A stretch of DNA of 64,000 bases from Octopus sinensis (Eukaryota). Shown here piece after piece: positions 27,578 through 54,451 of the stretch. The translations under genes were made by a program, and so were the position numbers. The first letter of the stretch is position 1. Every line of letters begins with the position of its first letter. The stretch spans positions 14,198,001 through 14,262,000 of the forward strand of contig NC_043010.1 in NCBI RefSeq assembly GCF_006345805.1, in the 5' to 3' direction. The notes beneath the pieces were generated by a model. That model was not told where the DNA came from. It saw only the letters and a list, made by a program, of their open reading frames with translations, and searched no databases.

Positions 27578-27638
<61 letters not shown>

Positions 27639-33376: not shown

Positions 33377-33921
33377 ATGGAGAACTTTCTTACCTGGAGT
33401 ATTGCACAGGTAGACACAACTTCTTTCACCTCCCCACACAAGTCCCAGCAGTGTGACGACAACAACAACAATAACAACAACAACATCAACAACAACAACT
33501 ACGACAGCTACAGCAAAAATAAGGACAGCGAAGACAACGCACTGGAGATTCGATTATCGGCAATCTGTGCTGGAATCTTACTTCTAGTTACAATCTTCTT
33601 GACCACTGTCGTCTACGTGTCGAATATGTTCAACAATGCGGGGCTAGCTCTGTGGGAGGGCTGGGGAAACCCAACGACAAAGACAAAACGAGAGAAGGCT
33701 CGATGCTGGTGCGATGTCATAGCTCGGGCCCTGCTGGCTCCCAAGACGGAGAAGGTGACACCAAGAGAAAGTTCAAACCCTGTGAGTTGTGGTGAAAATG
33801 ATGTGACCGACAGCAGAAGCAGCAACAGTAAGGTAGAACGATCTCTTATTATCAGAAAGCAAAATGATAAATTACTGACCAAGAAGAAATACCAAGAATT
33901 AAGGATTGTCATTGACTTTCG
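33377..33921 (+). CDS. Nested unknown gene, exon A (poly-Asn, predicted TM helix aa ~60-82)
   Basis: 181-codon open frame in non-TE sequence with hydrophobic LSAICAGILLLVTIFLTTVVYVS. Donor cg|gtgaga at 33922 (phase 2). The start codon is uncertain. Confidence 0.6.
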
Positions 33922-34997
33922 GTGAGATTCTGTTGAGATTTTTTCCTCTTCTCTATTTTAGCCTCCCATCAAATATTTTAAATGTAGCACCACCGTTTGA
34001 ATTTTGTATGTTCTTCCATCATCTGCCCACACACATTTAGGCCATAATGTTGCATTCTATGAAACCCCAGGTCAGCACTGACCAAACAGATCTGTAACCG
34101 AAAAACATTCAAGGAGTAAGCTTATTTTCTTTTCCCCCTCTGTACTAGATTATCCTGGATAACAACATTATCCAATTTGTCCTTATGTTAAGATGGTATG
34201 GTCTGGTTTGAGGGAGATTTAGCTGTGATTTTTTGAAAACTGAGCAACTGTATTCAGTATGTTCTTTCATCTTTCTGAACACATTTTAGGTCACAATGTT
34301 GCATTCCATGAAACCCAAGGGATGAGTGTAATTTCTTTTCCCCCTCTGTACTAGAGTATCCTAGACAACATTATCCAATTTGTCCTTATGTTAAGATGAT
34401 ATGGTCTGATTTGAGGGTGATTTAGCTGTGATTTTTTTTTTAAATGGAGCAAATGTATTCAGTATGTTCTTCCAAATTTCTGAACACAATTTTAGGTCAC
34501 AATGTTGCATTCCATGAAACCCAAGGTTAGCCGTAACCAAGCAGATCTACGACCAAAAACATTCAAGGGATGAGTGTACTTTCTTCTCCCCGCTTTGTAC
34601 TAGAGTATCCTAGACAACAGCATTATCCAAATTGTCCCAATTTTAAGATAGTAGGGTCTGATTTGAGGGAGATTTAATTGCGATTTTTTGCACATGGAGC
34701 AACTGTATAGATCTGGCATGGGTAACCTTTTTCAAGAAGTGGGCTGCACGAGACGTGGGTCATCATCAGGTGAACCACACAACTAAGAGAACTGAAAGAA
34801 CTATTTTGTAAGGCATTGCCATTCAGAAGTCCCCGCCTCAAACTGCAAGCTGCTCATGAGAGGCATAGAGACCCCACTTATTACTGTCTGTCTTGACATT
34901 GAAGTTTAGTCCCCAAGTCATTGCTGATCCAGTGGACCTGATCAACATTATTCCAGCTGACCCCATTCTGGACAGAATGGGCTCAGCTGGAATATTC

Positions 34998-35030
<33 letters not shown>

Positions 35031-37199
35031 TTAGCGTCCGCTTTCCATGCTAGCATGGATTGGACGGTTCAACTGGGGTCTGGGAAGCCAGAAGGCTGCA
35101 CCAGGCTCCAGTCTTATCTGGCAATGTTTCACCTGCACTGGTGCCAGGTGAGGCTGGCATCGGCCACGGTCGGATTGGTGCATTTTACGTGCCATCGGCA
35201 CGGAAGCCAGTCGAGGCAGCTCTGGCATCGGCCATGATTCGGATAGTGCTTTTTATGTATCTCCAGTCCAGGGGTCCTGGCATCTGCCGGGTGACAGTCA
35301 TAGGATTGGTTCAATTTCGATTTCACTTGCCCCGGATATGTTCAGCATAAATGCTAAAGGTTAAACTGTCTTATAATGGCAGGCAAGAGCCTCTATGTTA
35401 TTGCATGATGTGTTAGAAATAACAGGCATGGATATGTGATTGAGAAGTTCACAGGTGTAGGAGTGGCTGTGTGGTAAGTAGCTTGCTTACCAACCACATG
35501 GTTCCGGGTTCAGTCCCACTGCGTGGCATCTTGGGCAAGTGTCTTCTGCTAAAGCCCCGGGCCGACCAATGCCTTGTGAGTGGATTTGGTAGACGGAAAC
35601 TGAAAGAAGCCTGTCGTATATATGTATATATATGTATATGTATGTGTGTGTATATGTTTGTCCCCCTAGCATTGCTTGACAACCAATGCTGGTGTGTTTA
35701 CGTCCCCGTCACTTAGCGGTTCGGCAAAAGAGACCGATAGAATAAGTACTGGGCTTACAAAGAATAAGTCCTGGGCTTACAAAGAATAAGTCCTGGGGGT
35801 CGATTTGCTCGACTAAAGGCGGTGCTCCAGCATGGCCGCAGTCAAATGACTGAAACAAGTAAAAAAGAGGAAAAAACGAGAAAACCTATGATTTCAGGTT
35901 CAGTCCCTCTGCATGGCATCTTGGGGGAATGGTTTCTACTGTAGCCCCTTGTTGACCAAAGCTGTGTGATTGAATTTGACAGGGAGAAATTGAAAAGAAG
36001 CCTCTTTTACATGTGTTGAGGGAGGGTTTCTATCTACTTGTTATGACATTCTGTGCTAATTTTAAACTAAATTATTCAATGTGCTCTTCTTTCTAAGATA
36101 GTAAGGTGTGATTTGAAGGAGATTTGGCAACTGGCTCTGTCAGGTGGGTAGAGGTTTCAGCAGTGCAATAAGTTGCATGTCAGTCAATGTTTTAATTCTT
36201 TGACTTCAAGTCAGCTCCGAATAAGCAAGATTAAAGGCATTCCAACTATGGCCATTTCATCTTCATATCAGGCAGTATAAGCAAGGACTATGTTATCCAA
36301 TGTATCCCTTTTTTAAAACAAAAATTGTGTAATATGACAAGAGACATTTGGTCGTTATTTTTAGCGGGTCTTGTAATTTCAAACAGGCTCCATGATTGCT
36401 TCATAAAGGTCTGCTTTGATCAAAGGTGTTCCAACTCAGACCAATTCATCTGTTTTTAATAACCACAATATATCTAAGATATGTCAAAATCAAAATCGAA
36501 ACCGATCAACATCAATGGAAATTGTAGCTGTGATACCAGTGCCGGTGGTACGTAAAAAGAACCATCCGAACGTGGCCGTTGCCAGCGCCGCCTGACTGGC
36601 CTCAGTACCGGTGGCATGTAAAAAGCACCATCCGATCGTGGCCGTTTGCCAGCCTCGCCTGGCCCCCGTGCAAGTGGCACGTAAAAAGCTCCATCTGATC
36701 GTGGCTGTTTGCCAGCCTCGTCTGGCACCTGTGCCGCTGGCATGTAAAAAGCATCCACTACACTCACGGAGTGGTTGGCGTTAGGAAGGGCATCCAGGTG
36801 TAGAAACCTTGCCAGATCAGACTGGGCCTGGTGCAGCCTTCTGGCTTCCCAGACCCCAGTTGAACCGTCCAACCCATGCTAGCATGGAAAGCGGACGCTA
36901 AATGATGATGATGATGATTACAATATTGGACATGTACTTCTATTTTCTAAGATAGTAGGATAAATTTGAGGGAGATTTGGATCCAAGCAGCTCAAGTGAC
37001 TATCCCACACTGCTGTCCTCTATCTATTCTAATGTCTCATATATTCCATAGTTTTTCCATATAACAATATTCCTTATTTTGTTGTTGCTTGTTCTTTTAT
37101 AAAGAAGAATGTTTTGTTACAGACATAAGAATGGTACTTGTAAAAGACCTCAGTTCTGACTGAGCATATCTATGATGAAAATCATTATGACCTTGAGCA

Positions 37200-37395
37200 A
37201 TTTTCTCTCAAAACACTTAAACCTTGTCATACATGCACACTAATATCACACATCCAGCGAAGCATACTAGCTTCATTTCTTTCAAGTTTTCACATGTCGT
37301 CTGCAATCACAGCCAAGGTTTCACTGCTGTATAGCATGACTGCTTGCACACAGGCATCATACAATCTGCCTTTCACTCTGAGAGGCCCTTTGTTC
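37200..37395 (-). mobile_element. RTE-type LINE fragment
   Basis: RVKGRLYDACVQAVMLYSSETLA...KLERNEASMLRWMC. Confidence 0.75.
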
Positions 37396-37663
37396 CCAAT
37401 ATATATATATATTATTTCTTTACTACCACAAGGGGCTAAAGCAGAGAGGACAAACAAGGACAGACAAATGGATTAAGTCGATTATATCGACCCCCAGTGC
37501 ATAACTGGTACTTAATTTATCAACCCCGAAAGAATGAAAGGCAAAGTCGACCTCGGCGGAATTTGAAATCAGAACGTAGTGGCAGACGAAAAACCACTTA
37601 GCATTTCGCCCGGCATGCTAACGTTTCTGCCAGCTCGCCGCCTTATATATATATATATAGGCG

Positions 37664-37689
<26 letters not shown>

Positions 37690-37701
<12 letters not shown>

Positions 37702-38140
37702 AATAAAATAGAACATATGCATATATATAAACATATATGTACGTACCTACCTCTACATGTACATATACACGCATATATGTGTACAGGACACCAAAAAGAC
37801 GTCGAACACATAGAGAGACGAAAAACATAGACACAAACCAAGGAACAAGACAAGCAAAAAAAGAGGTACAGGACAATAAGCACAACGAAAAATCCCCTTC
37901 TTCAGTCGCTAAGGTTTCATCTACTAAACGTTTCGAATATATATATACCGGAGTAAACACATAAATGTGAAACAAGGTGGAAAAAAAGAGTACTCAAATA
38001 CCAGTGGTAGAGTAATATGCTTTATTTTAAGCAGCAGAAAATTCAACAAAATCTGTTACTCAGAGTTTCTCGTTGCCGTTGTCGGCAACGAGAAACTCAG
38101 AGTAACAGATTTTGTTGAATTTTCTGCTGCTTAAAATAAA

Positions 38141-38141
<1 letters not shown>
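37690..38141. mobile_element. (TA)n-embedded repeat ending in a 59-bp near-perfect hairpin (probably PLE pseudo-LTR)
   Basis: Arms 38020-38078/38083-38141, 4-nt loop, one mismatch. The 5' part has an inverted homologue at ~43945-44040. Confidence 0.55.
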
Positions 38142-38193
<52 letters not shown>

Positions 38194-38696
38194 TATAGGT
38201 GCAGGCATGGCTGTGTGGTACCTTGGACAAGTGTATCTACTATAGCCTCGGGCTGACCAAAGCTTTGCGAGTGGATTTGTTAGATGGAAACTGAAAGAAG
38301 CCTGTCATGTATATATGTGTGCTGTGTGTTTGCCCCCCCCCCCCGCTATTGCTTGACAACAAATGTTGGTGTGTTTATGTCCCCGTAACTTAGCAGTTCG
38401 GCAAAAGAGACCGATAGAATAAGTACTAGGCTTACAAAGAATAAGTCTTGGGGGTCGATTTGTTCGACTAAAGGCGGTGCTCCAGCATGGCCACAGTCAA
38501 ATGAATGAAACAAGTAAAAGAGTAAAAGACAGCACACACACACACACACACACACATAAATCTGTGATTGTGAATGTGTGTGTGTGTGTGTGTGAGTGAG
38601 TGCGTTTATGTCAATGCCACATAAAACTGGTGATGCTATTGAAGTGGAGCAATGCAGTAGTTCAACAAACACACATTGATAAATTAAATACCAAAC

Positions 38697-39443
38697 ACGG
38701 GACTGTCACGTTTAGTTGACTGTATACAACCGCTCTATCGCCTCACCACTGCTCATATCTCTTCGAGATATTTAGAAATTTAATATTTCTAATTTTGGTG
38801 ATCAGTGAATAGATTTCACTGAAAATATATATATTTGCGGAGGCTTGGCAAACACCTCAACTAGCAGGACTTGCTACCCTAGACTGATGACGAGCAAGAC
38901 TCAAAAACATGCATGTCTCTAGATGCAGGCCTAGCTTTTGGGGGTGCTTGTCTCCCCTTAGCAAATATAAGGACAGAGGAAATGTGTCAAAGCCGACAGG
39001 AAGCGTCGATGCGTCCTAGGGCTAAATAGCGGTAGTGTGATTCCCTTTATGGGACTGTCACGTTTAGTTGACAGTATACAACCACTCTATCGCCCCCACC
39101 ACTGCTCATATCTCTTCGAGATATTTAGAAATTTAGTATTTCTAATTTTGGTGATCAGTGAATAGATTTCACCGAAAATATAGATATTTGCGGAGGATTG
39201 GCAAACACCTCAACTAGCAGGACTTGCTACTCCAGATTGATGACGAGCAAGACTGAAAAACATGCATGTCTCTAGATGCTGGCTCTAGCTGGTGGGGGCT
39301 TCTCGTCTCCCCTTAGCAAATATAAGGACAGAGGAAATGTCTCAAAGCCGACAGGAAGCGTCGATGCTTCCTAGGGCTAAATAGCAGTGGTGTAATTCCC
39401 TTTACGGGACTGTCACGTTTAGTTGACAGTATACAACCACTCT
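38697..39443 (+). repeat. Tandem ~352-355-bp structured repeat (2 units plus a 38-nt partial) with type I hammerhead-like motif; retrozyme or PLE pseudo-LTR-like
   Basis: GGGACTGTCACG starts at 38699, 39051 and 39406. The motif CTAGA-CTGATGA-CGAGCAAGACTC-AAAAA-CATGCATG-TC-TCTAG is at 38879-38922, with a decayed copy at 39232-39275. Confidence 0.8.
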
Positions 39444-40193
39444 TTTAAATAACCACTGGGGTGACTATACTTGGCTAAACCCTTGAAGGCAGTGCTTCAT
39501 CATGACCAAGTTCCAGTAAGTGGTAAAAGACGAAATGAACACCATACTTAATTAAATTTATTTCTGTAATTGTAATTGCAACAATTAAGTTATGCTATTT
39601 ACAAACATGCTTGACATGGTTGTGTCTTTGGTTACACCCTGATTCCCATTTAACCTTTACATCTGTACTTATATATTTACACACTCCTACACACACATCT
39701 ACATAGGTATAATCAGATCTCAGCATACTTTTCTGGTAGTGAAACAATTATTTCATCTTTAGACACAATTAAAAAAACAAAAAAACACTTAAAACTAACA
39801 GAAAGAGGCAGCAAAGACAGAGAGAATAAGAAAATTAATTAAAACTCAAGACACAGTGATGTCACAAACTTTGCTGTGTCGTGATGTATTCCTTCCTTTT
39901 TAAGTTTAAACTTCCTCTCTTTTTTCTCTCTCACTCAATGCATCCACAACCACCACCATCACCACTCTCTCTTTTACTCTTTTACCTGTTTCAGTCATTT
40001 GACTGCGGCCATGCTGGAGCACCGCCTTTAGTCGAGCAAATTGACCCCGGGACTTATTCTTTGTAAGCCCAGTACTTATTCTATCGGTTCTCTTTTGCCG
40101 AACCGTTAAGTGACGGGGACGTAAACACACCAGCATCGGTTGTCAAGCAATGCTAGGGGGACAAACACAGACACACAAACATATACACACACA

Positions 40194-40228
<35 letters not shown>

Positions 40229-40231
<3 letters not shown>

Positions 40232-40898
40232 TAAAACGGTAAGATAACAAAAGAAAGAAAGAGACCTCAATATTATGTAAATAGAGGAAATTTATCTATA
40301 CAATAATATGTTACATTACTCGTCGCATTTTTCGCCATAAAAATTATATAAAAATACATAAAAAATATATAAAATCTTCTTGGGACATAACATAGAAAGC
40401 ATGTTCTATCTGTTTTCTTTAGGGGACCAAAAACGTAACAGAAATATACCAAGCCCTATACCAACGACAGCGGAAGGTGCGGTCTATGCGACATGGAGAG
40501 ATGGCTTATCTGGAAAAGCAGCTTAGACCCTACTACATGTCTAAACACAAGGACAGAACTTTTCGGATCATGCCCACATGTGACTAAATTTCTGTTACGT
40601 TTTTGGTCCCCTAAAGAAAACAGATAGAACATGCTTTCTATGTTATGTCCCAAGAAGATTTTATATATTTTTATATATTTTTTATGTATTTTTATATAAT
40701 TTTTATGGCGAAAAATGCGAGCGATGTATAAGTACGCAGGAAAGCAGAGTTATAACACAGTAATTTCCCTTTGTATAACAGTATTTTTTCATAGCGTTTT
40801 CAAATAGCCAGATAACCGAAGAGATGTCGTGGATTCCCACTTCGGCATCTGAAACTCAGAGTTTTATCTTGACTATCGAGTAATGTAACATATTATTG

Positions 40899-40900
<2 letters not shown>
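40229..40900 (+). mobile_element. Penelope-like element remnant: endonuclease C-terminus between inverted pseudo-LTR arms, inserted in the (TA)n of a SINE
   Basis: 40448-40627 reads TKPYTNDSGRCGLCDMERWLIWKSSLDPTTCLNTRTELFGSCPHVTKFLL, resembling the PLE PY..RCxLC..E..LN.R.EL..CxH C-terminus (recalled). Inverted repeats at 40323-40445/40588-40720 and 40299-40322/40877-40900. Confidence 0.72.
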
Positions 40901-40932
<32 letters not shown>

Positions 40933-41987
40933 TACAACAGGCTTCTTTCAGTTTCCGTCTACCAAAATCCACTCACAAGGCTTTGGTCGGCCCGAGGCTA
41001 TAGTAGAAAACACTTGCCCAAGGTGCCACGCAGTGGGACTGAACCCGGAGCCATGTGGTTGGTTACCAAGCTACTTACCACACAGCCACTCCTGCGCCTT
41101 ACCTGTTTACTTTTTACATTATTTAAATTACTTCCTTTAATGTTATGCAAAAGATGGATGGACAGGTAAGACTGTACTACTGCATAAGTATATAGATTTG
41201 GTGCATCTCCAGTTTCTGTCTGATAAAATAACAATTAGAAATAGCAGCCAAATCTTCAAATCATATTAAAAAAAAGGAAGGAAAGGTAGGGAGAATACAC
41301 TGGAGGAATGTACCCTGAAGTTACCATATTTAAATAAAAACAAGATTATAGGTCTGTCAAATTTGGGTTGCCCTAAGGTTAAGCAAAACCTGGTATAAAA
41401 CCTGCAAGAAATAGCAGCCAATGCTTTTTTCAAATGGCTACCCTTCCTACCATTTTGAAAAGGAGAGAGACATATTGGGTAATGTCATGCTAGATATGGA
41501 CTGTTCAAGAATGGGATGGATTGTCCTGGAGATAAACAACAACTAGAATAAACAGACAATTGTCAAGGAATTTGAGAAGAAATTCCAAATATGGAAGCAA
41601 AGCCTGAAATCATGAGGCCTCAAAACAAGGCTTCAAATAGGGCACATTCAATTGCATTAATGCTTATGGGAAACCTAACTTTGCATATAGGACTCAGGAT
41701 GGTTTTTTAAAGACATTTCTTTTAAAAGTGTATCTTATGTGTCATTAAGTATAGTATGCTATGGGTGCACAAGAGGTTCAGTAGAATTAAATGATAGTAA
41801 TGAAATTATTGTATAGGCACAGGAGTGGCTGTGTGGTAAGTAGCTTGCTTACCAACCACATGGTTCTGGGTTCAGTCCCACTGCGTGGCATCTTGGGCAA
41901 GTGTCTTCTGCTATAGCCCTGGGCCAACCAATGCCTTGTGAGTGGATTTGGTAGACGGAAACTGAAAGAAGTCCGTCGTATATATGA

Positions 41988-42019
<32 letters not shown>

Positions 42020-42243
42020 GTTTGTGTGTCTGTGTTTGTCCCCCTAGCATTGCTTGACAACCAATGCTGGTGTGTTTACGTCCCCGTCACTTAGCGATTC
42101 TGCAAAAGAGACCGATAGAATAAGTACTGGGCTTACAAAGAATAAGTCCCGGGGTCGAGTTGCTCGACTAAAGGCGGTGCTCCAGCATGGCCGCAGTCAA
42201 ATGACTGAAACAAGTAAAAGAGTAAAAGAGTAAGAGAGAGAGA

Positions 42244-42510
42244 ATGCTCAGGTGCACCACAACTTGTCAAAAGTGCATATAAAGTATATGCAGTAATGTA
42301 CAAATGTCTGGATAGCGAACAGTGTATGAGTCAGATACATGCTTGCCAGTGTATGGAGGGGAGAAAATCAGGTGTAGTGTTGGCGAATCTCAGGAAGCAT
42401 GGAAGTTTTGAAGGATGCAGTGCTCCAACAACTAACAACTGATGCCGGCAGTCTGTTCCATGCTTCAGCAACTCTTAGCGTGAAAAAATGTTTCCAGAGA
42501 AAGATTTTGT
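42244..42510 (-). mobile_element. CR1-type LINE 3' end
   Basis: KHFFTLRVAEAWNRLPASVVSCWSTASFKTSMLPEIRQHYT. Confidence 0.8.
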
Positions 42511-44529
42511 AGGTGCCAGGTGAAGAAGAGTAATTAGTAGTTAGCACTAGAAACACCCATGTAATAAAATAATTCAAATGTTCCACAGGTATCCTAGAAG
42601 AAACTGATAGCTTCTGTTACCAAGGTAACTTAATTAGCAGTGAAGGAGGGTATTCTGAAAGCAAAATTACTCAAAGTAAGAACAGAATGAGGAAAAAAAT
42701 CAGGGAGCTTTTACCTGTGCAGGTAACAAGAGGATATTTTTCAAGTGAAAGGCAGAGTGTCATAAAAATGAAAATACCACAGCCATCACTCACAAGCAAG
42801 TATGATTTAGTAATTGTTTTAGGTTTTTGGATTTGGTAGTTTGCTTTCGCTAAATGTTTTAGGTTCCTATGAAATAGTGAGCAAACAGAGACACCCTGCC
42901 AGCAGTCCCGTCCCTTGATCCAGCAGTACATCAAGGATATGACAGCAAGAAGGAGAAAGGTCTGCACCAGTACATAACTGGTACTTACTTTCAGTTTTTT
43001 AGACTGAATCAATTCTCTCAAAAGCTCAGAGGACTCTACAGAGGTAGTTGATAGCCTATGTCACATAAGTGACCAAGTAAGCAGTGAAGGAGGGTGGTCT
43101 GAATACATAGAGACTAGAACAGTGGTTTTCAACCAGGGTTCCGCCAGTACAGTCCAGGGGTTCCGCAAGAAGTGACAAAACTGCCAAAACCGACAGTAAT
43201 TTTTAATTCTCCTGTGCAGATATGTGTGCATAAGACTATTAAATTATTGCACAGGGGTTCCTCGAGCCAGTGGAATGTTTCCTTGGGGTTCCGCTCCAGC
43301 AAAAATGTTGAAAAGCACTGGACTAGAATAAAAATGGGATGGAAAATGTTCAGGGAGCATTGTATGATACTTGTGTCATTGTTGCCACTGTCAGCGCCAC
43401 TACTTTTCCATGCTTGCATGTGTTAGACAGAATTTGCAGAGATATATTTTCTACGGCTGAATGCTCTTTCTGTCACCAACCCTCACCTACCTCCAAATGA
43501 GAAAATATCATCCTTGACCAGACACATTTCCATAGTAAGCTAGAAACAACTGACATCAGTTGTATGACGATGATGCTTACTTGTGACTTTCATCCGATTC
43601 TAAGACAAGGTGACGCATACATATGACAGACATCAGTTTGTGTTTACCAAATCCACTAACTAAATCTTTAGTTAGTCCAAGGTTATGATAGCAGAAGAAA
43701 TTTATTCATGGTGAAATGCAACCATATGGTTGGCAAATGAACTTCTTAACAAAAAGGACGCATAGTTAAGAAGATGGCTTCACAACCATGAGATTTTGGG
43801 TTCTTTCTCTCTGCAAAGAACTGTGGGTAGGTGTCAACTATGGGGGCTGCTCAATGCCTTGTTAATGGAATTAGTAGACTAAAACTATCAGAAGTCAATC
43901 ATTTATGTGTGTATATGTGTGTTTTTTAGACTGAATCAATTCTCTGGGTACCCATATATGCATGTATATATACATGTAGAGGTAGGTACGTACATATATG
44001 TATGTATATATGCATATGTTTTATTTATTAATTTATATATATATAAATACAGTTAACGGGTTAGATGTGTTGCTATGGCCATCTCTTATGTATTTAAACG
44101 CACACTGTATTTATATGAATAATATAAAGACTATTGACTAGTTTTTTTCTTCATGCTAGACCACAGGTAGCAAAAAATTTCTAAATAATTTTTTGCTACC
44201 CTGAAATTTATATCTATATCTATATCTATCTATCTATCTATCTATCTATATATATATATATATAAAACAAAGAGGGTCTTTGGCCACATAATGAGTTGCA
44301 AATACTGTTGTCTGTAGTAAAAGGAAATAACAGTCCTCTGGCTGCTATTTCTAATACTTTCGGTATGTGGTCTAGCAACTTGTTGCAAAGACCCTCTTTG
44401 TTATAATTATATAAACTTTTACCGAATATGGTCCTTTTCCATACCAAAACACTACTTGGTGAAATTTGTTGATTTTATTAAATTAATTATATTTCACCCT
44501 TTATCTGTATCTATATATATATATATATA

Positions 44530-44844
44530 TATATATCAAATATGAGGATAAAATTCTTTTCGACAAAAAATATTTTCTCGAAAAATTTTTTATCAATGGC
44601 CAGCACATTAAAAAATACCTTTAACGGTTAAATTTATAAACAATTCATAAATGAGGGCAAAGGAAAAAAAAATTCTAATGCCAAATATGCCGAAAAATTG
44701 GACATATTGTCCATTAACCATATAATTTTTTCACAATACGCACGCTACTTTTGTGAAAAAATTATATGGTTAATGGACAATATGTCCAATTTTTCGGCAT
44801 ATTTGGCATTAGAATTATTTTTCCTTTGCCCTCATTTATGAATT
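44530..44844. mobile_element. Foldback remnant, probably Penelope-like, flanked by (TA)n
   Basis: ~95-bp inverted arms at 44642-44736/44751-44844. The right arm reads CEKIIWLMDN...LELFFLCPHL*, echoing the ELF..CPH motif at 40.5 kb. Confidence 0.5.
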
Positions 44845-45146
44845 ATATATATATATATATATGCACACATACACATATCAATATATGTATAACATATACG
44901 TACATATACAAACACATTATTATATCTCAGGAAGGTTATTATGCCACTAATAAATGTATTCACAGGTTCTATTTCCCTTCTTTTAGTAGTATTGGTTAAT
45001 TTGTTAAAATGTAACCACTTAACCCATCAATTGTTTGGTCAATCAATCAATGGTTTCAATTTGAGAAACCAAGCAGATTAATTGACCAAACAATTAATCA
45101 ATGGTTGAATGATTAACCAATTGATTAATAACAATAATAATGATAA

Positions 45147-45186
<40 letters not shown>

Positions 45187-46572
45187 GGTGGTAGTGGTGG
45201 TGGTAGTGGTGGTGGTGGTAGTAGAAGTGAAATGGAACCAGTATCTGTCTATTAGGATAATGACCCCACCCAAGATAACGAAATTTGTTTCAACGAGTTT
45301 GTATGTGTGTACACATGTGAGTGTGTATGTGTGTGATTGAGTGTGTATGTGTGTGATTGCGTGCGTGTGTCTGTGTATATGCTTGGGTGTATGTGTATTT
45401 ATTCCTTATGTTCTGACATTGTCTGCATGGCATGTTGCGTAAAAAATAAGGTCACCATCTTATACAGTAATATTATTTTTTACAATCTAATGTGAAAGAA
45501 ATAGCTTAACCACTGAGTTGTTTGTTGTTTGAAGGATTAGGGGAACTAGCACATTACTTGGAAACAGGAAGGGGTTAGGCAACAGAAAGGGCCTCCAACC
45601 ATGGGAAAATTGGTTCAATAAATTTCACCTCACTTAGGCCAGCATGGAAAAGTGGATGTTAAAATAATGTCAAAAGGTGTGGCTGTGAGGTAAAAAGCTT
45701 GCTTCCCAACCGCATGGTTCTGGGTTCAGTCCCACTGCATGGCACCTTGGGCAAGTGTCTTCTACTATAGCCTCAAGCCAATGAAAGCTTTGAGTGGATT
45801 TGGTAGATAGAAACTGAAAGAAGCCCATCGTTTATATGTATGTAAGTATATATTTATGTGTGTGTATCTTTGTGTGTTTGTCCCCCCCCCCTCACCACTG
45901 CTTGACAGCCGGTATTGGTGTGTTTATGTCCTCATAAATTAGTAGCTTGGCCAACGAGATTGACGGAATAAATACTGGGCTTAAAAAATAAGTCCTGAGG
46001 TTGATTTATTCAACTAAAACCCTTTAAGGCAATGCTCCAGCATGGCTGCAGTCAAATGACTAAAACAAATAAAAGACAAAAGATTTATGGCTGTGTGGTA
46101 AGTAGCTTGCTTACCAACCACATGGTTCCGGGTTCAGTCCCACTGCGTGGAATCTTGGGCAAGTGTCTTCGGCTACAGCCTCGGGCCGACCAAAGCCTTG
46201 TGAGTGAATTTGGTAGATGGAAACTGGAAGAAGCCTGTCGTATATGTGTACATATATATATATATATATGTATGTGTGTATATATATATGTGTGTGTTTG
46301 TCCCCCTAGCATTGCTTGACAACCGATGCTAGTGTGTTTACGTCCCTGTCACTTAGCGGTTCAGCAAAAGAGACCGATAGAATAAGTACTAGGCTTACAA
46401 AGAATAAGTCCCGGGGTCGATTTGCTCGACTAAAGGCGGTGCTCCAGCATGGCCGCAGTCAAATGACTGAAACAAGTAAAAGAGTAAATGCTTTCCGAAA
46501 TCCGCCGAAACTATACCTGATTATATATACACTTTAGATGAGTTGTAGTGCACCTGAGCACTGTACACAATT

Positions 46573-46604
<32 letters not shown>

Positions 46605-46974
46605 TATCATCATCATCATTTAACGTCCGCTTTCCATGCTAGCATGGGTTGGATGATTTGACTGAGGTCTGGCGAACCAGATCACTGCACCAGACTCCAA
46701 TCTGATCTGGCAGAGTTTCTACAGCTGGATGCCATTCCTACTGCCAACCGCTCTGAGTGTAGTGGGTGCTTTTATGTGCCACCAGCACGAGGGTCAGTCA
46801 GGTAGTACTGGCAATGGCCACCTTAAATGGCACTATATATATATAAAATTGAATAAGGGTAGAAATTGATATTAATCAATTAAAACCAATGGCTTAGCAT
46901 ATTAAAAAAATCCGAAGATCAAAAATATTTTTACATACAAAATTTTAGTAGTCAGTCCTATAAATTTTGTATGT

Positions 46975-47032
<58 letters not shown>

Positions 47033-47182
47033 AAGGGTGAAATATAATTGATTTAATAAAATTAATAAATTTCACCTAGTAGTTTTTCGGTATGGAAATG
47101 ACCATATTTGGTAAGGATTATATTAATTATAATAAAGGGTATGTGGTTTTGAGCAACTTGTTGCAATTAACCCTTTATTATA

Positions 47183-47234
<52 letters not shown>

Positions 47235-48952
47235 GGTGCCCAAAAGCAGGTTTACAGTTATTCAACTCTTTTGCATTCATATATTAACAGTTTGGATCTT
47301 AATTATAAAAAAAAAAACATGAAACCAATATTCTTACATTCTCTTCACAGAAAAGGATGTATCGTAAAGTCTGATCGTCCTCTTTGGAGCCAGAAAATAC
47401 TTCAGCTTTCAACAAATTATCTCTAAAAATCTCATTCATCACCCATAATTGGAACACTGCCCCCACATCTAGGACAGTGCAGCACTACAATACACAGAGA
47501 CAGCATCAAAACAAAGAGCCCTCTGGCCAATGACGTGAGGTCACTTGCCCAACACACTGCTACTTCAAGTCCAGTTTCCTCCCTATGCGATTTCTTCTAT
47601 CGCTACTCCTCAAAGCCGGTTACTAGAGTCACCTCCCTTTATGTCCTCTCGACTCGCTTGTCTCCCTTCTTGTAACCCACACTGTATCCAACGACACCCC
47701 ATTCCAGGCACTGTGTTAACCACTACACTAAGTCCCTTTTTCCCCCAGGACATATCAATCTGCCTGAGTTCAGTCCTTACTTGTACTTTTTTTTTTTTTA
47801 AAGTTTATCTGGCAACCATCAACTTGTTTCATTAGCTTGGAATGAGATCACTGTGCGTGGCTGACAATTTGACACGGTTGACTGGGCATTCAACCTGTTT
47901 CAGTGACTGCACGTTTTGGCACAGGAGGCAAACACACACACACGTATGTGTGCACAGAAATATACACATACAGATAGTGAGAGAGAGAGAGAAACATTAT
48001 GCATACATGGCCGTTGCCAGCCCTGCCCCGACTGGCCTCCGCGCCGGTGGCACGTAAAAGCACCATCCGTTCGTGGCCGTTTGCCAGCTCCATCTGGCTC
48101 CTGTGCGGGTGGCACATAAAAAGCACCCACTACACTCATGGAGTGGTTGGCGTTAGGAAGGGCATCCAGCCGTAGAAACACTGCCAGATCAGACTGGGCC
48201 TGATGCAGCCTTCTGGCTTCACAGACCCCAGTTGAACCGTTCAACCCATGCTAGCAGGGAAAGCGGAGGCTAAATGATGATGATGATGATATACATGCAG
48301 ATGTTGAAGTGTAGTTAAGCTTACTTCCCAACTACAGGTTCTTGGTTCAATCCCACTGCGTGGTACCTTGGACAAGTGTTTTCTACTACAGCCCTAACCT
48401 TGTGAGTAGATTTCGTAAATCATCATCGTTTAACGTCCGCTTTCCATGCTGGCATGGGTTGGACGATTTGAGTGAGGACTGGCAAACCAGATGGCTGCAC
48501 CAGGCTCCAATCTGATGGAAACTGAAAGAAGCCTGGTGCGTGTGTGTGTTTGTCCCCCTCACTGCTTGACTGCCAATGTTGATTTGTTTATGTCCCCCTA
48601 ACTTAACAGCTGGGAAAAAGGAGACCAATAGAATAAGTATCAGAATTAAAAGAATAAGTACAGGGAGGTCAATTTGTTTGACTAAACCCTTCAGGTTGGT
48701 ACCCCCAGCGTGACAACAGTCCAATGACTGAAACTAGTGCAAGATAAATACAAACATAAGATTTTCACAAAGAGAGAGGGGGGGGTGAGAAATTTGGTTT
48801 CAAATTTTGGCACAAGGCCAGCAAGTTTGGAGGAGTGGATAAGTTGATTCCATTGACCCTGGTCAGTGCTCAAACTGGTATGTATTCCATCGACCCCAAG
48901 AGGGAAGAAAGGCAAAGTCAACCATGAGGGGATTTGAACTCAGAACATAAAT

Positions 48953-49552
48953 ATTTCTTTATTGCCCACAAGGGGCTAAACACAGAGGGGACAAACAAGG
49001 ACAGACAAAGGGATTAAGTCGATTACATCGACCCCAGTGCATAACTGGTACTTTATTTATCGACCCTGAAAGGATGAAAGGCAAAGTCGACCTCGGCAGA
49101 ATTTGAACTCAGAACGTAGCGGCAGACGAAATACCTATTTCTTTATTACCCACAAGGGGCTAAACATAGAGAGGACAAACAAAGACAGACAAAGGGATTA
49201 AGTCGATTACATCGACCCCAGTGCATAACTGGTACTTTATTTATCGACCCTGAAAGGATGAAAGGCAAAGTCGACCTCGGCAGAATTTGAACTCAGAACA
49301 TAGCGGCAGACGAAATACCTATTTCTTTATTACCCACAAGGGGCTAAACATAGAGAGGACAAACAAGGACAGACAAAGGGATTAAGTCGATTATATCGAC
49401 CCCAGTACGAAACTGGTAATTTATTTATCGACCCCGAAAGGATGAAAGGCAAAGTCAACCCTGGCGGAATTTGAACTCAGAACGTAACGACAGACGAAAT
49501 ACGGCTACGCATTTCGCCCGGTCTGCTAACGTTTCTGCCAGCTCGCCGCCTT
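48953..49552 (-). mobile_element. SINE B head-to-tail trimer (184-bp period) inside an older SINE B
   Basis: Units start at 48953, 49137 and 49321. An 18-bp direct repeat TTGAACTCAGAACATAAA lies at 48934 and 49551. Confidence 0.85.
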
Positions 49553-50159
49553 GAACTCAGAACATAAAGACAGATGAAATGCCGCTAAGCATTTTGCCCA
49601 GTGTGCTTACCATTCTGCCAGCTTGCCACCGCAATACTGCAAAATATATTAGCAACAGTACAACAACAACAACAACAAAATTAATAATTGCTTCTAACAT
49701 AGAAATAAGGCTTAAAAGTTGGGGAAGGTTTGACAGATACTTCAACCCTGGAAGGAGGAATGGCAAAGTTGATCTTAGCAGGAGCTGAAATTGGAACCTA
49801 AATTGCCAGAACATATGCCACAAGGCATTTTGTCTGATACTCTAGTGATTCTGCCAAATCACCATCCTAGTGACAACAGTAGGAACAATGACGAGAATAC
49901 TAACAACAACAACGTTATCAATCCTCATCATCATCATCGTTGCCATCATCATTCATTTTAACATCTTCTTTTCCATGGTTGTATGGCTTGATTGGAGTTT
50001 ATTGAGGCCAATTTTCTATGGCGGGGCACCTTTCCTGTTGCCAACAATCACCTGTTTCTAAGAGAGATAATATTTCCCTATGGACAGACATGCAGACATA
50101 TTTATGCAGAATATTGGAAATAACTAATACAGCTTGTAAGACAGTGACACACACTAGTA

Positions 50160-50500
50160 CCTGAGACCCCCTTCGGTCAGATACTGACCATGGGATTTCA
50201 CCTAGAGAGTTACCCTCTGAGGCACAAGTCTGGGCAAGGTTGTTTTATGTAAGACCAGCAGTCGCCCATGCATACCAGCCTCCCCTCTCCATGCCACCAG
50301 TGTTATCCAAGGGAAAGGCAAAGGGGCCGATACAGCTTGGCACCTGTGACGTCGCAACTCATTTCTACAGCTGAGTGAACTGGAGCAACGTGAAATAAAG
50401 TGTCTTGCTCAAGAACACAACGCGCAGCCCTGTCCGGGATTCGAGCTCACAACCTCACGATCGTAAGCTCGACGCTCTAACCACTGAGCCATGCGCCTTC
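50160..50500 (-). mobile_element. tRNA-derived SINE family H (also 62060-62392 and 18345-18470)
   Basis: On the minus strand: TGGCTCAGTGG A box, GAGCTCGAATCCC B box, TTGAGCAAGACAC core. Confidence 0.8.
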
Positions 50501-50814
50501 ACACACTAGTACCACAACTCTGTGAAGACAAAGAAACAAACACAATCACACACACACAAATATATATATATAGGTGCAGGCATGGCTGTGAGGTAAGAAG
50601 CTTGCTTCCCAACACATGGTTCTGGGTTCAATGTCACTATGTGGCACTATGTGTCTTGTGAGTAGATTTGGTAGATGGAAAACACACACACACACACCAT
50701 TATATATATGTAAAATATAGGGTAGTGAGTTTTGTTAGAAATCTCACTACCAGTGGCCCAGCATATATAAAAAGTCAATAGACAACATATTCTCAATATC
50801 AAAGTTATATGTGC

Positions 50815-51256
50815 ACTACTATAACTACCACCACCACCACCACCACCACTACCACCACCACCACTACTACTACCACCACTACCACCACCACCACTACTAC
50901 TACCACCACTACTACTACCACCACCACCACTACTACCACCACCATTACTACTACTACCACCACCACCACTACTACCACCACCACCATTACCACTACTACT
51001 ACTACCACCACCACTACTACCACCACCACTACTACTACCACCACCACCACCACTACTACCACCACCACCACTACCACTACTACCACTACCACTACTACTA
51101 CCACCACCACCACCACCACTACCACTACTACTTCTACCACCACCACTACTACCACCACTACTATCACCACCACCACTACTACCACCACTACTACCCCACC
51201 ATTACTACTACTACCACCACCACTACTACCACCACCACCACTACTACTACCACTAC
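50815..51256. repeat. Compound (CAC/TAC)n trinucleotide array, ~440 bp
   Basis: Direct inspection; the source of the poly-T, poly-V and His/Tyr ORFs. Confidence 0.95.
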
Positions 51257-51329
51257 ATAATCATGACAACAGCAGTCAGTGTTTGCTCCATTTTGTTGTA
51301 TTTCTTCTTGTTTTTCTTCCCCCTTCAAG

Positions 51330-51627
51330 AGACATCTGCATAGTCAACGCAAACCGAGAGAAGGGGAGAGTTTGTTGGTGGGCTGACATAGACAGAGACA
51401 AATTGTGGACAACAACAACAGCGTCAACAACAACAACATCGATGATGATGATGATGGTCGGTGCCAACCACCACAATGGTCAACTGAGCAACGCCTGCAG
51501 TCTACGCTACATCCAATACACACATTTGTCCCTTTTGCAGAAGGTGTACGACTACCTGCAACAGTTGCTTCAAATTGTGGGAGACGGATGCACAATCTGT
51601 GGCACTGATGAACAGGTCATCGTCAAG
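51330..51627 (+). CDS. Nested unknown gene, exon B
   Basis: ~30-nt pyrimidine tract and aag acceptor (phase 2, matches exon A). Donor aag|gtaaga (phase 0). DICIVNANREKGRVCWWADIDRDKLW...NACSLRYIQYTHLSLLQKVYDYLQQLLQIVGDGCTICGTDEQVIVK. Confidence 0.68.
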
Positions 51628-51640
51628 GTAAGAACAAAGG

Positions 51641-51880: not shown

Positions 51881-53202
51881 TAAGAACAACGGTGCACACA
51901 CACACACACGTGCATGTGCACACATACACACACAAAGAGATGCACCAAAATCTATGCATGCAGGTGTACACATACACAATCACAGATGCATTCACTAGAA
52001 AACTGGGGCATGAGTCAACAAGCAAGCCTCTATGTGGTTACTCAACTTGCTAAAAATAACAGCCAAGTTTCTCTTAGCATTTAAACCAGCCATATCTGAA
52101 CTACCTGCGATCGGGTATTCAGTCCAATTATTTCTATGTCCCCGCGCATGATACAGCCTTAAGACATTTATTGGATGGCCGTTGACTCTCAAGAGTTCCT
52201 CCGCCCTTTGACGGGTTCTGTTTTTCATCCCACAGGGTGTCCAATAAACACCCTCCTCACCAAGCAAGCTTGGTTTAGTCGCTGACGACCCAACCATGCA
52301 ACAGTTTGTACTGGGTTACATGTTACCAGTGGCACTCAAAGGTGACCTGACATAACACATATGTATACATACATACAAACAAACACACATAATCACAAGT
52401 GTTTTGTATGTGAAGAATATGTATGTATATGTGTGCGTGTGCGTGTGTCATCATCATCATTTAACATTTGTATTCCATGCTGGCATTGGTTGGACTGTTC
52501 AACAGCCCCAGTGCTGTGTGGTCTCCAACGTCCGCCGGTTGCCCTTCCTAACACCAACCACTTTACAGGGTATAACAGCAGCATTTTTCCATGGTACCAG
52601 CAAAAAACTAAAGAACCCTCTCAAGCCCTGCATTGCCACTACTCCAAATGATTACCAATCTGTAAAAGGGGACAGGGCACCTTGCAGCTCGCAAAGTAAA
52701 AGAGTGACCCCATAATAGAAAGAACAGATTCATTGTTGTGAGAGGACGCTGATGGAGAGAATAACAGAGGGAACGGTTTGGGAGTAGGAGTAATGGAAAC
52801 AGGGAAAGAGGAAAGGGAGGGGGTCCAAAGCGTAATGGTGAAGGGGTAGGTTGAGTTGATGGACCTAGTGGAATATATGCATGTGTGTGTGTGTGTGTGT
52901 GTGTGTGAGAAGGTTATATCAAGCTAAAATCTGGTGATGTTGTTTGTGTCATGTCTCTTTATGACCTGTAAATTAGTGGTGCAACAAATGGAGATCAATA
53001 AAAATAACTGTAGTCAATTAAATCAACTAAAGTATTTGATTTAATTAACTCAAAGCATAAAGATACACCAATAAATATTGCAGAGCATTTTGTCCATCAC
53101 CCTAAAAATTCTGCCAGGGTACAACCAATATGTGCCATATTTACTCATGTATAAGTCGCACCCCTAATTTAGTGTTATATCTTGGTACAAATTTTTTCCT
53201 GC

Positions 53203-53450
53203 CATCATCATCATCATCATCATTGTTCGACTGAGGTCGAGACAATGGAATTTACTATGCTACGCCAGACTTCACAGTCCATCATAGCATTACAGAGGTC
53301 TTGTTGCTGGATGCCTGTATCCCTGGAATTACATCAGGGTAGGAGAGTGTGCGCCCTCTGGTATCACGAGTAGATGGCTTCCAGAGGAGAAGAGTAGAAA
53401 TTGCCTCGTTTTCCTGCCATAGCTTTGCTCCATGTATAAACCGTATGCCA
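53203..53450 (-). mobile_element. RTE-type LINE 3' end with (GAT)n tail
   Basis: LLLWKPSTRDTRGRTLSYPDVI...DTGIQQQDLCNAMMD.EVWRSIV with a frameshift, followed by the microsatellite tail. Confidence 0.72.
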
Positions 53451-54121
53451 GGTTTTTAAGTTAAAATCATATAACATATTGCAACAAAGGGCACCATTCG
53501 AGCGTGATCGTTACCAGCGTCGCCTTACTGGCACTTGTGCCCGTGCTAGTAGGGTGCCAAGAGCACCATCCGAGTGTGATCGTTGACAGAGCGGCTAACC
53601 GGCTTCCATGCCAGTGGCACGTAAAAGGGCTCCATTTGAGCGTGATCGTTACCAAAGTCGCCTTACTGGCATGTGTAAATGGATTCAAGCGAGGTCGTTG
53701 CCAGTACCCCCTGACTGGCCTCCTTGCCGGTGGCACATAAAAAGCACCCACTACACTCTCAGAGTGGTTGGCGTTAGGAAGGGCATCCAGCTGTAGAAAC
53801 TCTGCCAAATCAAGATTGGAGCCCGGTGCAACCATCTGGTTCGCCAACCCTCAGTCAAAATCGTCCAACCCATGCTAGCATGGAAAGCGGACGTTAAACG
53901 ATGATGATGATGATGACATGACTAAATACAATATTAGTAAAAAAAATATTTTGTTGCAAAAGATGAACTTAGTAGTGAAAAACATTATAACTTTTGTATT
54001 GGATTGGTGCATAATTAATGACTTTTTTTTTCTATTTTAAATAAAACTTGTAAATTAAATTATAAAATGTTCGTTAATTATGCACCGACCCAATAATTTT
54101 TTTCCCGTGATATCATTTCAG

Positions 54122-54451
54122 ATTCTGATGGTAAAAGATGCCATAGATTTATGGCTCAGATGCCAAAGAGATGAAATGTTGGACGAAAATGAATCTGATG
54201 AGGAAAGAGATACCAAGGAAGCTGAAGACACAAAGGGTTCAACAGATATCGACAGTCTGGTGGCCGAGGGCAAGAAGGGCTCTAGCATGACCCTGAGTAG
54301 TAACAGCAGCAGTAGTAGCAACAAATATGCAGTTTGTCTCAACACCTTAATAGTGGACAGAGATGGCATGCTTGGTGCTGGCAGGAACCGCTCCAAGAGC
54401 CAGCTGCTCGATGCTGTCCAAGAAGGGGACGGCACTAGAGCCACGACATGA
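54122..54451 (+). CDS. Nested unknown gene, exon C (terminal)
   Basis: atttcag acceptor, phase 0. ILMVKDAIDLWLRCQRDEMLDENESDEE...GTRATT*. AATAAA at 54583 and 54633. Confidence 0.68.
   Translation: MLMVKDAIDLWLRCQRDEMLDENESDEERDTKEAEDTKGSTDIDSLVAEGKKGSSMTLSSNSSSSSNKYAVCLNTLIVDRDGMLGAGRNRSKSQLLDAVQEGDGTRATT

What the first reader, a model, noticed from the sequence alone, without database searches (positions are those of the whole stretch)
33377..54451. Unrecognised 390-aa membrane-protein gene nested antisense in the 29-kb RPP30 intron
Seen in sequence: three plus-strand exons (545, 298 and 330 nt) join with matching phases (2, then 0) into one ORF, with AATAAA downstream. All lie within RPP30 intron 27320-56646, which is about ten times longer than the largest of the other RPP30 introns in the window (~3.3 kb). 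The protein has poly-Asn, one hydrophobic segment (aa ~60-82), a Cys/Trp-containing middle region, a predicted helical block (SLLQKVYDYLQQLLQIVGDGCTICGTDEQVIVKILMVKDAIDLWLRCQ) spanning the B/C junction, and an acidic tail. I do not recognise the family. Inference: a lineage-restricted receptor or adaptor, possibly interfering transcriptionally with a housekeeping gene.
Basis: partly seen in the sequence, partly recalled or inferred. Interest (0 to 1): 0.75.

Follow-up and report, generated by a model that had tools for sequence, protein, structure and literature searches.

The report
Annotated orphan membrane gene inside RPP30 intron
The three exons are a real octopus gene for a small membrane protein of unknown family, sitting backwards inside a long intron of the housekeeping gene RPP30. 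It is already in RefSeq as an uncharacterised protein, so it is an ordinary nested orphan gene, not a discovery.

Summary
Exons 33377-33921, 51330-51627 and 54122-54451 (+) have GT/AG borders and join into a 390-aa ORF, all within minus-strand RPP30 intron 27320-56646.

The gene is not unrecognised. The protein is 100% identical to RefSeq XP_036364549.1, "uncharacterized protein LOC118765894" of Octopus sinensis. The window is CM016872.1:14,198,001-14,262,000.

It is a genuine coding gene:
- O. bimaculoides has the orthologue, also nested in RPP30.
- dN/dS is 0.16 (p = 3e-7 against neutrality), and all four indels are multiples of three.
- The exons are not repeats.

No family was found in Pfam, in PDB sequences, by AlphaFold plus Foldseek, or among 1.84 billion representative proteins. 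The only distant relative is one unannotated ENA contig of unknown organism. It shares a ~55-aa block (aa 238-296) with the same intron position and phase.

Best reading: a lineage-restricted, single-pass membrane protein with a conserved two-helix interaction module. That it is a real gene is shown; the mechanism is inferred. Nothing here bears on interference with RPP30. Interest is low.

The parts
32957..33376 (+). Conserved upstream region, a probable 5' UTR. It includes a (CA)n tract at about 33300-33345.
   Evidence: It aligns almost base for base with O. bimaculoides, but 1-nt indels break the frame and in-frame stops are present in O. sinensis. The N-terminal extension annotated in O. 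bimaculoides is therefore not conserved as coding sequence. The true transcription start is not known.
33377..33921 (+). Exon A, coding part (aa 1 to 181 and two bases of codon 182). It starts at ATG 33377 and its donor is CG|GTGAGA.
   Evidence: Against O. bimaculoides, dN/dS is 0.08 (12 synonymous and 4 non-synonymous differences) with one 6-nt in-frame indel in the poly-Asn tract.
33554..33622 (+). Codons for the single hydrophobic (transmembrane) segment, aa 60-82.
   Evidence: The Kyte-Doolittle 19-residue maximum is 2.57 at aa 63-81, and no other segment comes close.
33922..51329 (+). Intron 1 of the nested gene (17.4 kb), rich in interspersed repeats.
   Evidence: It is collinear with O. 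bimaculoides at 75-95% identity. Across the whole host intron, 37% has other copies within the window.
51330..51627 (+). Exon B (aa 182-281). Its acceptor is a tandem AGAG and its donor is AAG|GTAAGA.
   Evidence: dN/dS is 0.15. O. bimaculoides isoform X2 (P0006) reads as if it used the AG two bases downstream, which shifts the frame.
51496..51627 (+). Exon-B part of the conserved block (aa 238-281, CSLRYIQYTHLSLLQKVYDYLQQLLQIVGDGCTICGTDEQVIVK).
   Evidence: It is 57-58% identical to the ENA contig homologue P0008/L002 (phmmer E = 1e-7 over 1.84 billion proteins; tblastn). The donor position is the same.
54122..54166 (+). Exon-C part of the conserved block (aa 282-296, ILMVKDAIDLWLRCQ).
   Evidence: The homologous exon in L002 starts VLMVKDAIGLWEKKQ directly after a CAG acceptor, in phase 0.
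54122..54451 (+). Exon C, coding part (aa 282-390 plus the TGA stop).
   Evidence: dN/dS is 0.34 in all three pairwise comparisons of three octopus species. Relative to the other two species, the end of the O. sinensis ORF carries a 24-nt in-frame deletion.
54452..54660 (+). 3' UTR with AATAAA at 54583-54588 and 54633-54638.
   Evidence: The second signal and its surroundings are conserved in L003. The cleavage site is not known.
56647..56724 (-). RPP30 exon just upstream (in RPP30's direction) of the host intron. It ends ...YDILAVQPSDKDLFH|GT.
27233..27319 (-). RPP30 exon just downstream of the host intron. It starts AG|MACQTLEVDIISLDLSEPLPFNVKYP.

Best explanation
This is a real protein-coding gene that has been found only in cephalopod-type sequences. 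It is already annotated as Octopus sinensis LOC118765894.

Its whole transcription unit sits on the opposite strand inside one long intron of RPP30. The product is a 390-aa protein with a single membrane-spanning segment.

**Proposed mechanism (inferred, not shown)**
- A short, low-complexity N-terminus (aa 1-59) faces the lumen or outside of the cell.
- The segment at aa 60-82 anchors the protein in the membrane.
- The remaining roughly 300 residues face the cytoplasm.
- The only deeply conserved part is a two-helix hairpin of about 55 residues (aa 238-296). It most likely serves as a protein-protein interaction or self-association module on a membrane-tethered scaffold.
- Fast-evolving, disordered acidic and Ser-rich tails flank this module.

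The nesting is most simply a passive consequence of the gene lying in a large, repeat-rich intron. It need not be a regulatory device.
For: **Shown**
- The exons, splice sites and ORF are as described.
- The protein is 100% identical to XP_036364549.1.
- The window equals CM016872.1:14,198,001-14,262,000.
- The host is RPP30.
- The O. bimaculoides orthologue is nested in RPP30 in the same way and the locus is collinear.
- Purifying selection: dN/dS = 0.16, from 22.5 synonymous and 14.5 non-synonymous differences (binomial p = 3e-7). The dS of 0.10 matches the intron divergence. All four indels (6, 6, 3 and 24 nt) are multiples of three.
- Exon C is intact in a third octopus.
- The exons have no interspersed copies in the window, and no paralogues turned up among 5.8 billion proteins.
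- A distant homologue keeps the conserved block, both intron positions and both phases.
- There is a single strong hydrophobic segment.
- The only part AlphaFold predicts with some confidence (pLDDT 60-69) is helix 247-265, a turn, then helix 274-303. That is exactly the conserved block.

**Inferred**
- The topology rests on several features of the C-terminal side: the basic stretch KTKREKAR, the acidic tail with its SDEE motif, and the Lys-rich tail of the distant homologue. All are typical of cytoplasmic regions.
- The interaction role rests on the conserved part being an amphipathic helical hairpin with no catalytic signature.
Against: - I could not inspect any spliced transcript. No RNA-seq tool was available, and no Logan transcript contig encodes the protein.
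- The charge balance over the 15 residues on either side of the membrane segment is equal (-1 on each side). The orientation is therefore not settled.
- The C-terminal part has 10 Cys and 3 N-x-S/T sites, which would also fit an extracellular domain.
- Both structure models are poor (mean pLDDT 32 and 44), and Foldseek gave nothing below E = 2.7.
- No homologue of exon A, which carries the membrane segment, was found within 10 kb upstream in the distant contig.
- O. bimaculoides has annotated isoforms that lack either the membrane exon or the conserved block.
Confidence: 0.6

Rival explanations
1. The gene is the same but the orientation is reversed. The protein would be a type II membrane protein. 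Its 59-residue N-terminus would be cytoplasmic. Its roughly 300-residue Cys- and Trp-containing C-terminal part would be extracellular or lumenal, disulfide-bonded and glycosylated. That would make it a receptor- or ligand-like surface protein.
For: - There is no cleavable signal peptide, and the hydrophobic segment could act as a signal anchor.
- The flanking charges are balanced.
- There are 10 Cys after the membrane segment. Two of them (C238, C269) are conserved in the distant homologue.
- All three N-x-S/T sites lie on the C-terminal side.
Against: - The C-terminal tail is acidic, Ser-rich and low in complexity.
- The distant homologue carries a long Lys-rich tail. This composition is typical of intracellular proteins.
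- The basic cluster KTKREKAR follows the membrane segment.
- The number of Cys is not conserved between the lineages.
Confidence: 0.2
2. The locus makes modular products rather than one protein. One product is a membrane-only form from exon A. Another is a soluble form from exons B and C, starting at an internal alternative first exon. In this reading the B-C unit is the ancient gene, and exon A was added in octopods.
For: - O. bimaculoides has annotated isoforms of 283 and 299 aa (exon A, then an early stop) and of 224 aa (an alternative first exon MKMPQPSLASK, then B and C). The alternative exon lies in intron 1 at L004:15542.
- Only B and C have a detectable distant homologue.
Against: - Exon A is the most constrained part (dN/dS 0.08).
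- The full A-B-C frame is kept in both species.
- The alternative first exon was not found as an exact peptide in the O. sinensis window.
- The frameshifted isoform may be splicing noise at a tandem AGAG acceptor.
- Only 10 kb upstream of the distant homologue could be read.
Confidence: 0.15
3. The main role of the transcription unit is regulatory. Antisense transcription through the RPP30 intron would modulate RPP30 by transcriptional interference, and the protein would be secondary.
For: - The antisense nesting is conserved in two species.
- Nested genes can interfere with their hosts in other systems (PMC3192792).
Against: - Strong purifying selection on the amino-acid sequence and in-frame indels show that the protein itself is selected.
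- The nested exons do not overlap any RPP30 exon.
- No expression data were available.
Confidence: 0.05
4. It is not a functional protein gene. It would be a chance ORF, a Gnomon artefact, or an exonised transposon fragment.
For: - There is no known domain.
- Low-complexity tracts arise from trinucleotide repeats.
- The structure prediction is poor.
Against: - dN/dS is 0.16 with p = 3e-7, and four of four indels are in frame.
- Splice sites are conserved in a very distant homologue.
- There are no repeat copies of the exons and no paralogues.
Confidence: 0.04

Closest known systems
RefSeq model XP_036364549.1 (LOC118765894, Octopus sinensis) and O. bimaculoides LOC106884282 (XP_014791064.1 and other isoforms)
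   Same: - It is identical to the former in sequence and exon structure.
- It is 97% identical in protein to the latter, with the same splice junctions and the same nesting in RPP30.
   Different: - Nothing differs from the former; this is the same object.
- The O. bimaculoides X1 model adds 102 N-terminal residues, which are frame-broken in O. sinensis.
- It also carries the name 'M-phase inducer phosphatase', which no domain supports.
Opposite-strand protein-coding genes nested in an intron of a host gene. Examples are Drosophila 2mit in timeless2 (PMC3786989) and vertebrate LRRTM genes in alpha-catenin genes (PMC3933685).
   Same: - The whole transcription unit lies inside one host intron, on the opposite strand.
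- It encodes a single-pass membrane protein.
- The nesting is conserved between related species.
   Different: - There is no sequence or domain relationship (no LRR or any other Pfam domain).
- The host is RPP30.
- Conservation of the nesting is shown only within the genus Octopus.
Taxonomically restricted (orphan) genes of cephalopods, as discussed for the octopus and squid genomes (PMC9068888)
   Same: No homologue was detected outside a narrow set of sequences, despite searches of 5.8 billion and 1.84 billion proteins.
   Different: It is not a single-species orphan. A relative with 58% identity over the conserved block and conserved introns exists in an unidentified, much more distant genome.

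Membership tests
RNase P/MRP subunit p30 (host gene RPP30, Pfam PF01876) | The protein matches the RNase_P_p30 profile above the gathering score. | tested here: met
   The exons flanking the intron, joined, score 81.6 bits against a cut-off of 35 (E = 7e-23, profile positions 86-173). The annotated host product of 322 aa carries PF01876.
Nested intronic gene, opposite strand | All exons of the inner gene lie within a single intron of the host, on the other strand, with no exon overlap. | tested here: met
   The inner gene spans 33377-54451 (+), or about 32957-54660 with its UTRs. It lies inside the minus-strand intron 27320-56646.
Nested intronic gene, opposite strand | The arrangement is conserved in a related species. 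| tested here: met
   In O. bimaculoides locus L004, the 495-aa model lies on the plus strand inside a minus-strand 323-aa PF01876 gene, and the locus is collinear. For the distant contig the test was inconclusive, because the contig ends 2.5 kb downstream and no RPP30 exon was seen.
Functional protein-coding gene | Purifying selection on the reading frame (dN/dS well below 1, with indels in frame). | tested here: met
   dN/dS = 0.16 with p = 3e-7, and four of four indels are multiples of three.
Functional protein-coding gene | Spliced transcripts with the predicted junctions. | not testable with these tools
   No RNA-seq was accessible. The only indirect hint is that RefSeq lists several splice isoforms for the O. 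bimaculoides orthologue. By my knowledge of the NCBI pipeline, such isoforms normally need transcript support.
Taxonomically restricted (orphan) gene | No detectable homologue outside the clade in sensitive searches. | tested here: inconclusive
   The only hits were octopus proteins and one ENA contig. The organism of that contig could not be identified, so the breadth of the clade is unknown.
Transposon-derived exon | The exon sequence is present in multiple dispersed copies. | tested here: not met
   Apart from the exons' own positions, only trinucleotide-repeat matches were found in the 64-kb window. There are no paralogous proteins.
M-phase inducer phosphatase (Cdc25), the name attached to O. 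bimaculoides isoform X1 | A rhodanese-like catalytic domain or the M-inducer phosphatase domain. | tested here: not met
   No Pfam family scored above E = 0.37 for the O. sinensis protein. The extra N-terminal 102 residues of X1 were not scanned separately; they are low in complexity and frame-broken in O. sinensis.
ETRAMP (PF09716), the best Pfam hit | A score above the gathering threshold. | tested here: not met
   The score was 11.2 bits against a cut-off of 29.1 (E = 0.37). The match covers only the poly-Asn tract and the membrane segment.
PP1-docking (RVxF) regulatory subunit, a lead from the motif RVCW at aa 195-198 | An RVxF motif conserved in homologues. | tested here: not met
   The motif is present in the octopus protein. 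The aligned stretch of the distant homologue reads EMS----LPGM.

The most novel reading that the evidence does not exclude
The block at aa 238-296 defines a previously undescribed small helical-hairpin domain. Its core reads LLQ+VY+YLQ+LLQ+VGDGC...Q+IVK | +LMVKDAI+LW. It would belong to a family of cephalopod (or wider molluscan) membrane-tethered scaffold proteins. The exon structure of the family would be ancient. Its tails would be remodelled lineage by lineage: acidic and Ser-rich in octopus, Lys-rich followed by CxC-repeat-rich in the other lineage. That pattern is seen in fast-evolving reproductive or neural genes.
Probability: 0.3. Interest if true: 0.35.

Novelty: already known. Interest (0 to 1): 0.15.

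Why it matters
It matters little beyond annotation. The work confirms that a RefSeq 'uncharacterized' model is a genuine, selectively constrained gene. It shows that the N-terminal extension and the 'M-phase inducer phosphatase' name of the O. bimaculoides model are probably artefacts. It also picks out a block of about 55 residues as the only part conserved over a long evolutionary distance. If cephalopod biologists want candidates for lineage-specific membrane scaffolds, this is one among hundreds. The nesting in RPP30 is a handy synteny marker, but there is no evidence that it has regulatory meaning.

Tried and rejected
- **Family searches: nothing.**
  - Pfam on the whole protein and on three sub-regions found nothing above threshold.
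  - PDB sequence searches with the whole protein and with a profile of the conserved block found nothing.
- **Homologue searches: no further relatives.**
  - The word-indexed search of 5.8 billion proteins was run three times: with the protein, with an alignment, and with the distant homologue's B+C product. It returned only octopus proteins and the same ENA contig.
  - The full phmmer scan of 1.84 billion representatives gave two hits only.
  - The JGI metagenome DNA scan with the conserved block gave none. One of its two patterns spanned the intron and so could not match genomic DNA.
- **Structure: uninformative.**
  - AlphaFold on the whole protein with a four-sequence alignment gave pLDDT 32, which is unusable.
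  - AlphaFold on aa 150-308 alone gave a helical hairpin at pLDDT 60-69.
  - Foldseek against the PDB gave a best E of 2.7, with generic helix-pair matches that I rejected as meaningless.
- **PP1-docking motif.** The RVCW lead was rejected because it is not conserved.
- **Transposon origin.** Rejected.
- **Identifying source organisms.** This failed for ERZ21867824 and SRR11869391. There was no nucleotide similarity to octopus and no paper mentions either accession. No paper mentions the gene or protein accessions.
- **Distant contig.** I looked for RPP30 exons and an exon-A homologue on it and found none in the 18 kb that could be read.
- **Technical note.** L002 and L003 were never copied to the script machine. 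I therefore fetched the same contig again as L005.


Full report
**Observation**

- Exon A runs from 33377 to 33921 and begins with ATG. Its donor is CG|GTGAGA.
- Exon B runs from 51330 to 51627. It follows a long pyrimidine tract and CAAG, and ends AAG|GTAAGA.
- Exon C runs from 54122 to 54451. It follows TTTCAG and ends in TGA.
- The lengths are 545, 298 and 330 nt. The phases are 2 then 0, and the joined CDS of 1173 nt gives 390 aa.
- AATAAA occurs at 54583 and at 54633.

**Identity**

The protein is 100% identical over its full length to XP_036364549.1, 'uncharacterized protein LOC118765894 [Octopus sinensis]'. The window is CM016872.1:14,198,001-14,262,000 of assembly GCA_006345805.1, in plus orientation. 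The gene is therefore already annotated, though not characterised. No paper in the library mentions the gene or protein accessions.

**Host gene**

- On the minus strand, the exon ending ...YDILAVQPSDKDLFH|GT lies at 56647-56724. The exon beginning AG|MACQTLEVDIISLDLSEPLPFNVKYP lies at 27233-27319. They bound an intron of 29,327 nt.
- Together with the next exon, they match Pfam RNase_P_p30 positions 86-173 at E = 7e-23.
- The public annotation has a 322-aa PF01876 product on the minus strand across the whole locus.
- Further RPP30 exons lie near 26210-26374, about 20730 and 18586-18687. The stop codon is near 17746.
- The host intron is by far the longest in the window. I did not place every small exon, so the factor of ten is approximate.

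**Is it a real coding gene?**

O. bimaculoides has the orthologue LOC106884282. It is likewise nested on the opposite strand of a 323-aa PF01876 gene, and the two loci are collinear.

| Measure (O. sinensis vs O. bimaculoides) | Value |
|---|---|
| Non-coding identity | mostly 84-93%, lower in repeat-derived blocks |
| Synonymous / non-synonymous differences | 22.5 / 14.5 |
| dS / dN | 0.10 / 0.016 |
| dN/dS, whole CDS | 0.16 |
| dN/dS, exon A / B / C | 0.08 / 0.15 / 0.34 |
| Binomial test against neutrality | p = 3e-7 |
| Indels | 6, 6, 3 and 24 nt, all multiples of three |

- A third octopus species (Logan contig from SRR11869391, L003) keeps exon C intact with the same dN/dS.
- The exons have no dispersed copies in the window, only trinucleotide-repeat matches. 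By contrast, 37% of the host intron is repeated within the window.
- No paralogues exist in the protein databases.
- Chance ORF, lncRNA-only and transposon readings are therefore effectively excluded.
- What I could not see is a spliced read, because no transcript data were reachable.

**Start codon**

The O. bimaculoides X1 model begins 102 codons further upstream. That stretch is very well conserved at the DNA level in O. sinensis, but 1-nt indels and in-frame stops interrupt it. It is therefore a conserved 5' UTR, and Met at 33377 is the conserved start. The X1 name 'M-phase inducer phosphatase' has no domain support.

**The protein**

- **aa 1-59:** low complexity, with poly-Asn and acidic residues.
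- **aa 60-82:** the only strongly hydrophobic segment.
- **aa 83-120:** a Trp- and Cys-containing stretch with the basic cluster KTKREKAR.
- **aa 121-236:** Ser-rich, then a mixed region, then poly-Thr and poly-Met.
- **aa 238-296:** the conserved block.
- **aa 297-390:** an acidic, then Ser-rich tail.

No Pfam family and no PDB sequence matches. AlphaFold on the whole protein is uninformative (pLDDT 32). On aa 150-308, only helix 247-265 and helix 274-303 reach pLDDT 60-69. Foldseek finds only generic helix pairs with E of 2.7 or more.

**Distant relative**

The exhaustive scan of 1.84 billion representatives found just one non-octopus hit. It is a 93-aa ORF on ENA contig ERZ21867824:ctg114246l, held as L002 and L005.
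- It is 58% identical over aa 238-287.
- The contig has an AG acceptor in the same phase, followed by D-I as in octopus. Its exon is 277 nt against 298 nt in octopus.
- The donor comes directly after ...QIIVK, followed by a 3695-nt intron.
- The next exon starts VLMVKDAIGLWEKKQ.
- After that exon start the two proteins diverge completely. The contig continues with about 250 Lys-rich residues, then, in another frame, a CxC-rich repeat region.
- The contig shows no nucleotide similarity to octopus and I could not identify its organism.
- Within the 18 kb that could be read there is no exon-A homologue and no RPP30 exon. Deep conservation of the membrane segment and of the nesting therefore remains open.

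**Mechanism**

*Shown:* a constrained gene, one membrane segment, and one conserved helical hairpin.

*Inferred:* an N-out, C-in orientation. The basis is the basic cluster after the membrane segment and the cytoplasm-like composition of the tails in both lineages. Also inferred is that the hairpin acts as an interaction or oligomerisation module on a membrane-tethered scaffold.

I put the gene's reality at about 0.9 and this mechanism at about 0.35.

*Rivals:*
- The inverse topology, giving a Cys-containing ectodomain.
- Modular membrane-only and soluble isoforms, as annotated in O. bimaculoides.
- A regulatory antisense role, for which there is no evidence here. This rival sits poorly with the selection seen on the protein sequence.

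**Comparison and novelty**

The object is the RefSeq model itself. As a kind, it resembles other opposite-strand intronic genes for single-pass membrane proteins. Examples are 2mit in tim2 (PMC3786989) and LRRTMs in alpha-catenins (PMC3933685). It shares no homology with them. It also fits the many lineage-restricted cephalopod genes (PMC9068888). It is already known as an annotation and ordinary in kind, so interest is low.

The small additions from this work are the selection test, the corrected start codon, the conserved block with its conserved introns, and the in-frame 24-nt C-terminal deletion specific to O. sinensis.

Noticed in passing
window 21907-21979 (-): A tRNA-Asp(GTC)-like sequence lies inside another RPP30 intron (ARAGORN; Rfam tRNA 44.8 bits). 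It could be a genuine tRNA gene or the head of a tRNA-derived SINE.
   Followed up: partly
window 51641-51882, and about 20 other places (for example 27364-27812, 35439-36016, 41812-42232, 45675-46828): A SINE-like interspersed repeat starts only 14 bases after the donor of exon B. Copies of this and other repeats cover at least 37% of the host intron. This probably explains part of why the intron is about 29 kb here but about 14 kb (with assembly gaps) in O. bimaculoides.
   Followed up: partly
window 54440-54451: O. sinensis lacks 24 nt (8 codons, ...ERTMGSM.) just before the stop codon. Both O. bimaculoides and the third octopus have them. The deletion is in frame.
   Followed up: yes
window 51328-51331; L004 19075-19078: The acceptor of exon B is a tandem AGAG. 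The O. bimaculoides isoform of 299 aa (P0006) reads as if it used the AG two bases downstream. That shifts the frame and truncates the protein. The same AGAG is present in O. sinensis.
   Followed up: partly
L004 10001-10306 compared with window 33068-33376: The 102-residue N-terminal extension of O. bimaculoides XP_014791064.1 is not open in O. sinensis, and its name 'M-phase inducer phosphatase' has no domain support. Both are probably annotation artefacts over a well-conserved 5' UTR that contains a (CA)n tract.
   Followed up: yes
L002 13943-15436 (= L005 9995-11489): The distant homologue's last exon runs on into about 250 Lys-rich residues. A 239-aa region of CxC / C-K-N-x-E repeats follows in a different frame. 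This implies a frameshift in the assembly or an unrecognised splice. Neither part matches a Pfam family.
   Followed up: partly
L004 (O. bimaculoides) 5055-5137, 7639-7868, 12912-13002, 14131-14528, 18256-18372: Runs of N (assembly gaps) lie inside the orthologous RPP30 intron. Intron-length comparisons between the two species are therefore unreliable.
   Followed up: no
cluster of P0001: The 90% cluster also holds a 36-aa JGI 'hypothetical protein' (P0002). It shows no visible similarity to the octopus protein and is probably a clustering artefact.
   Followed up: no
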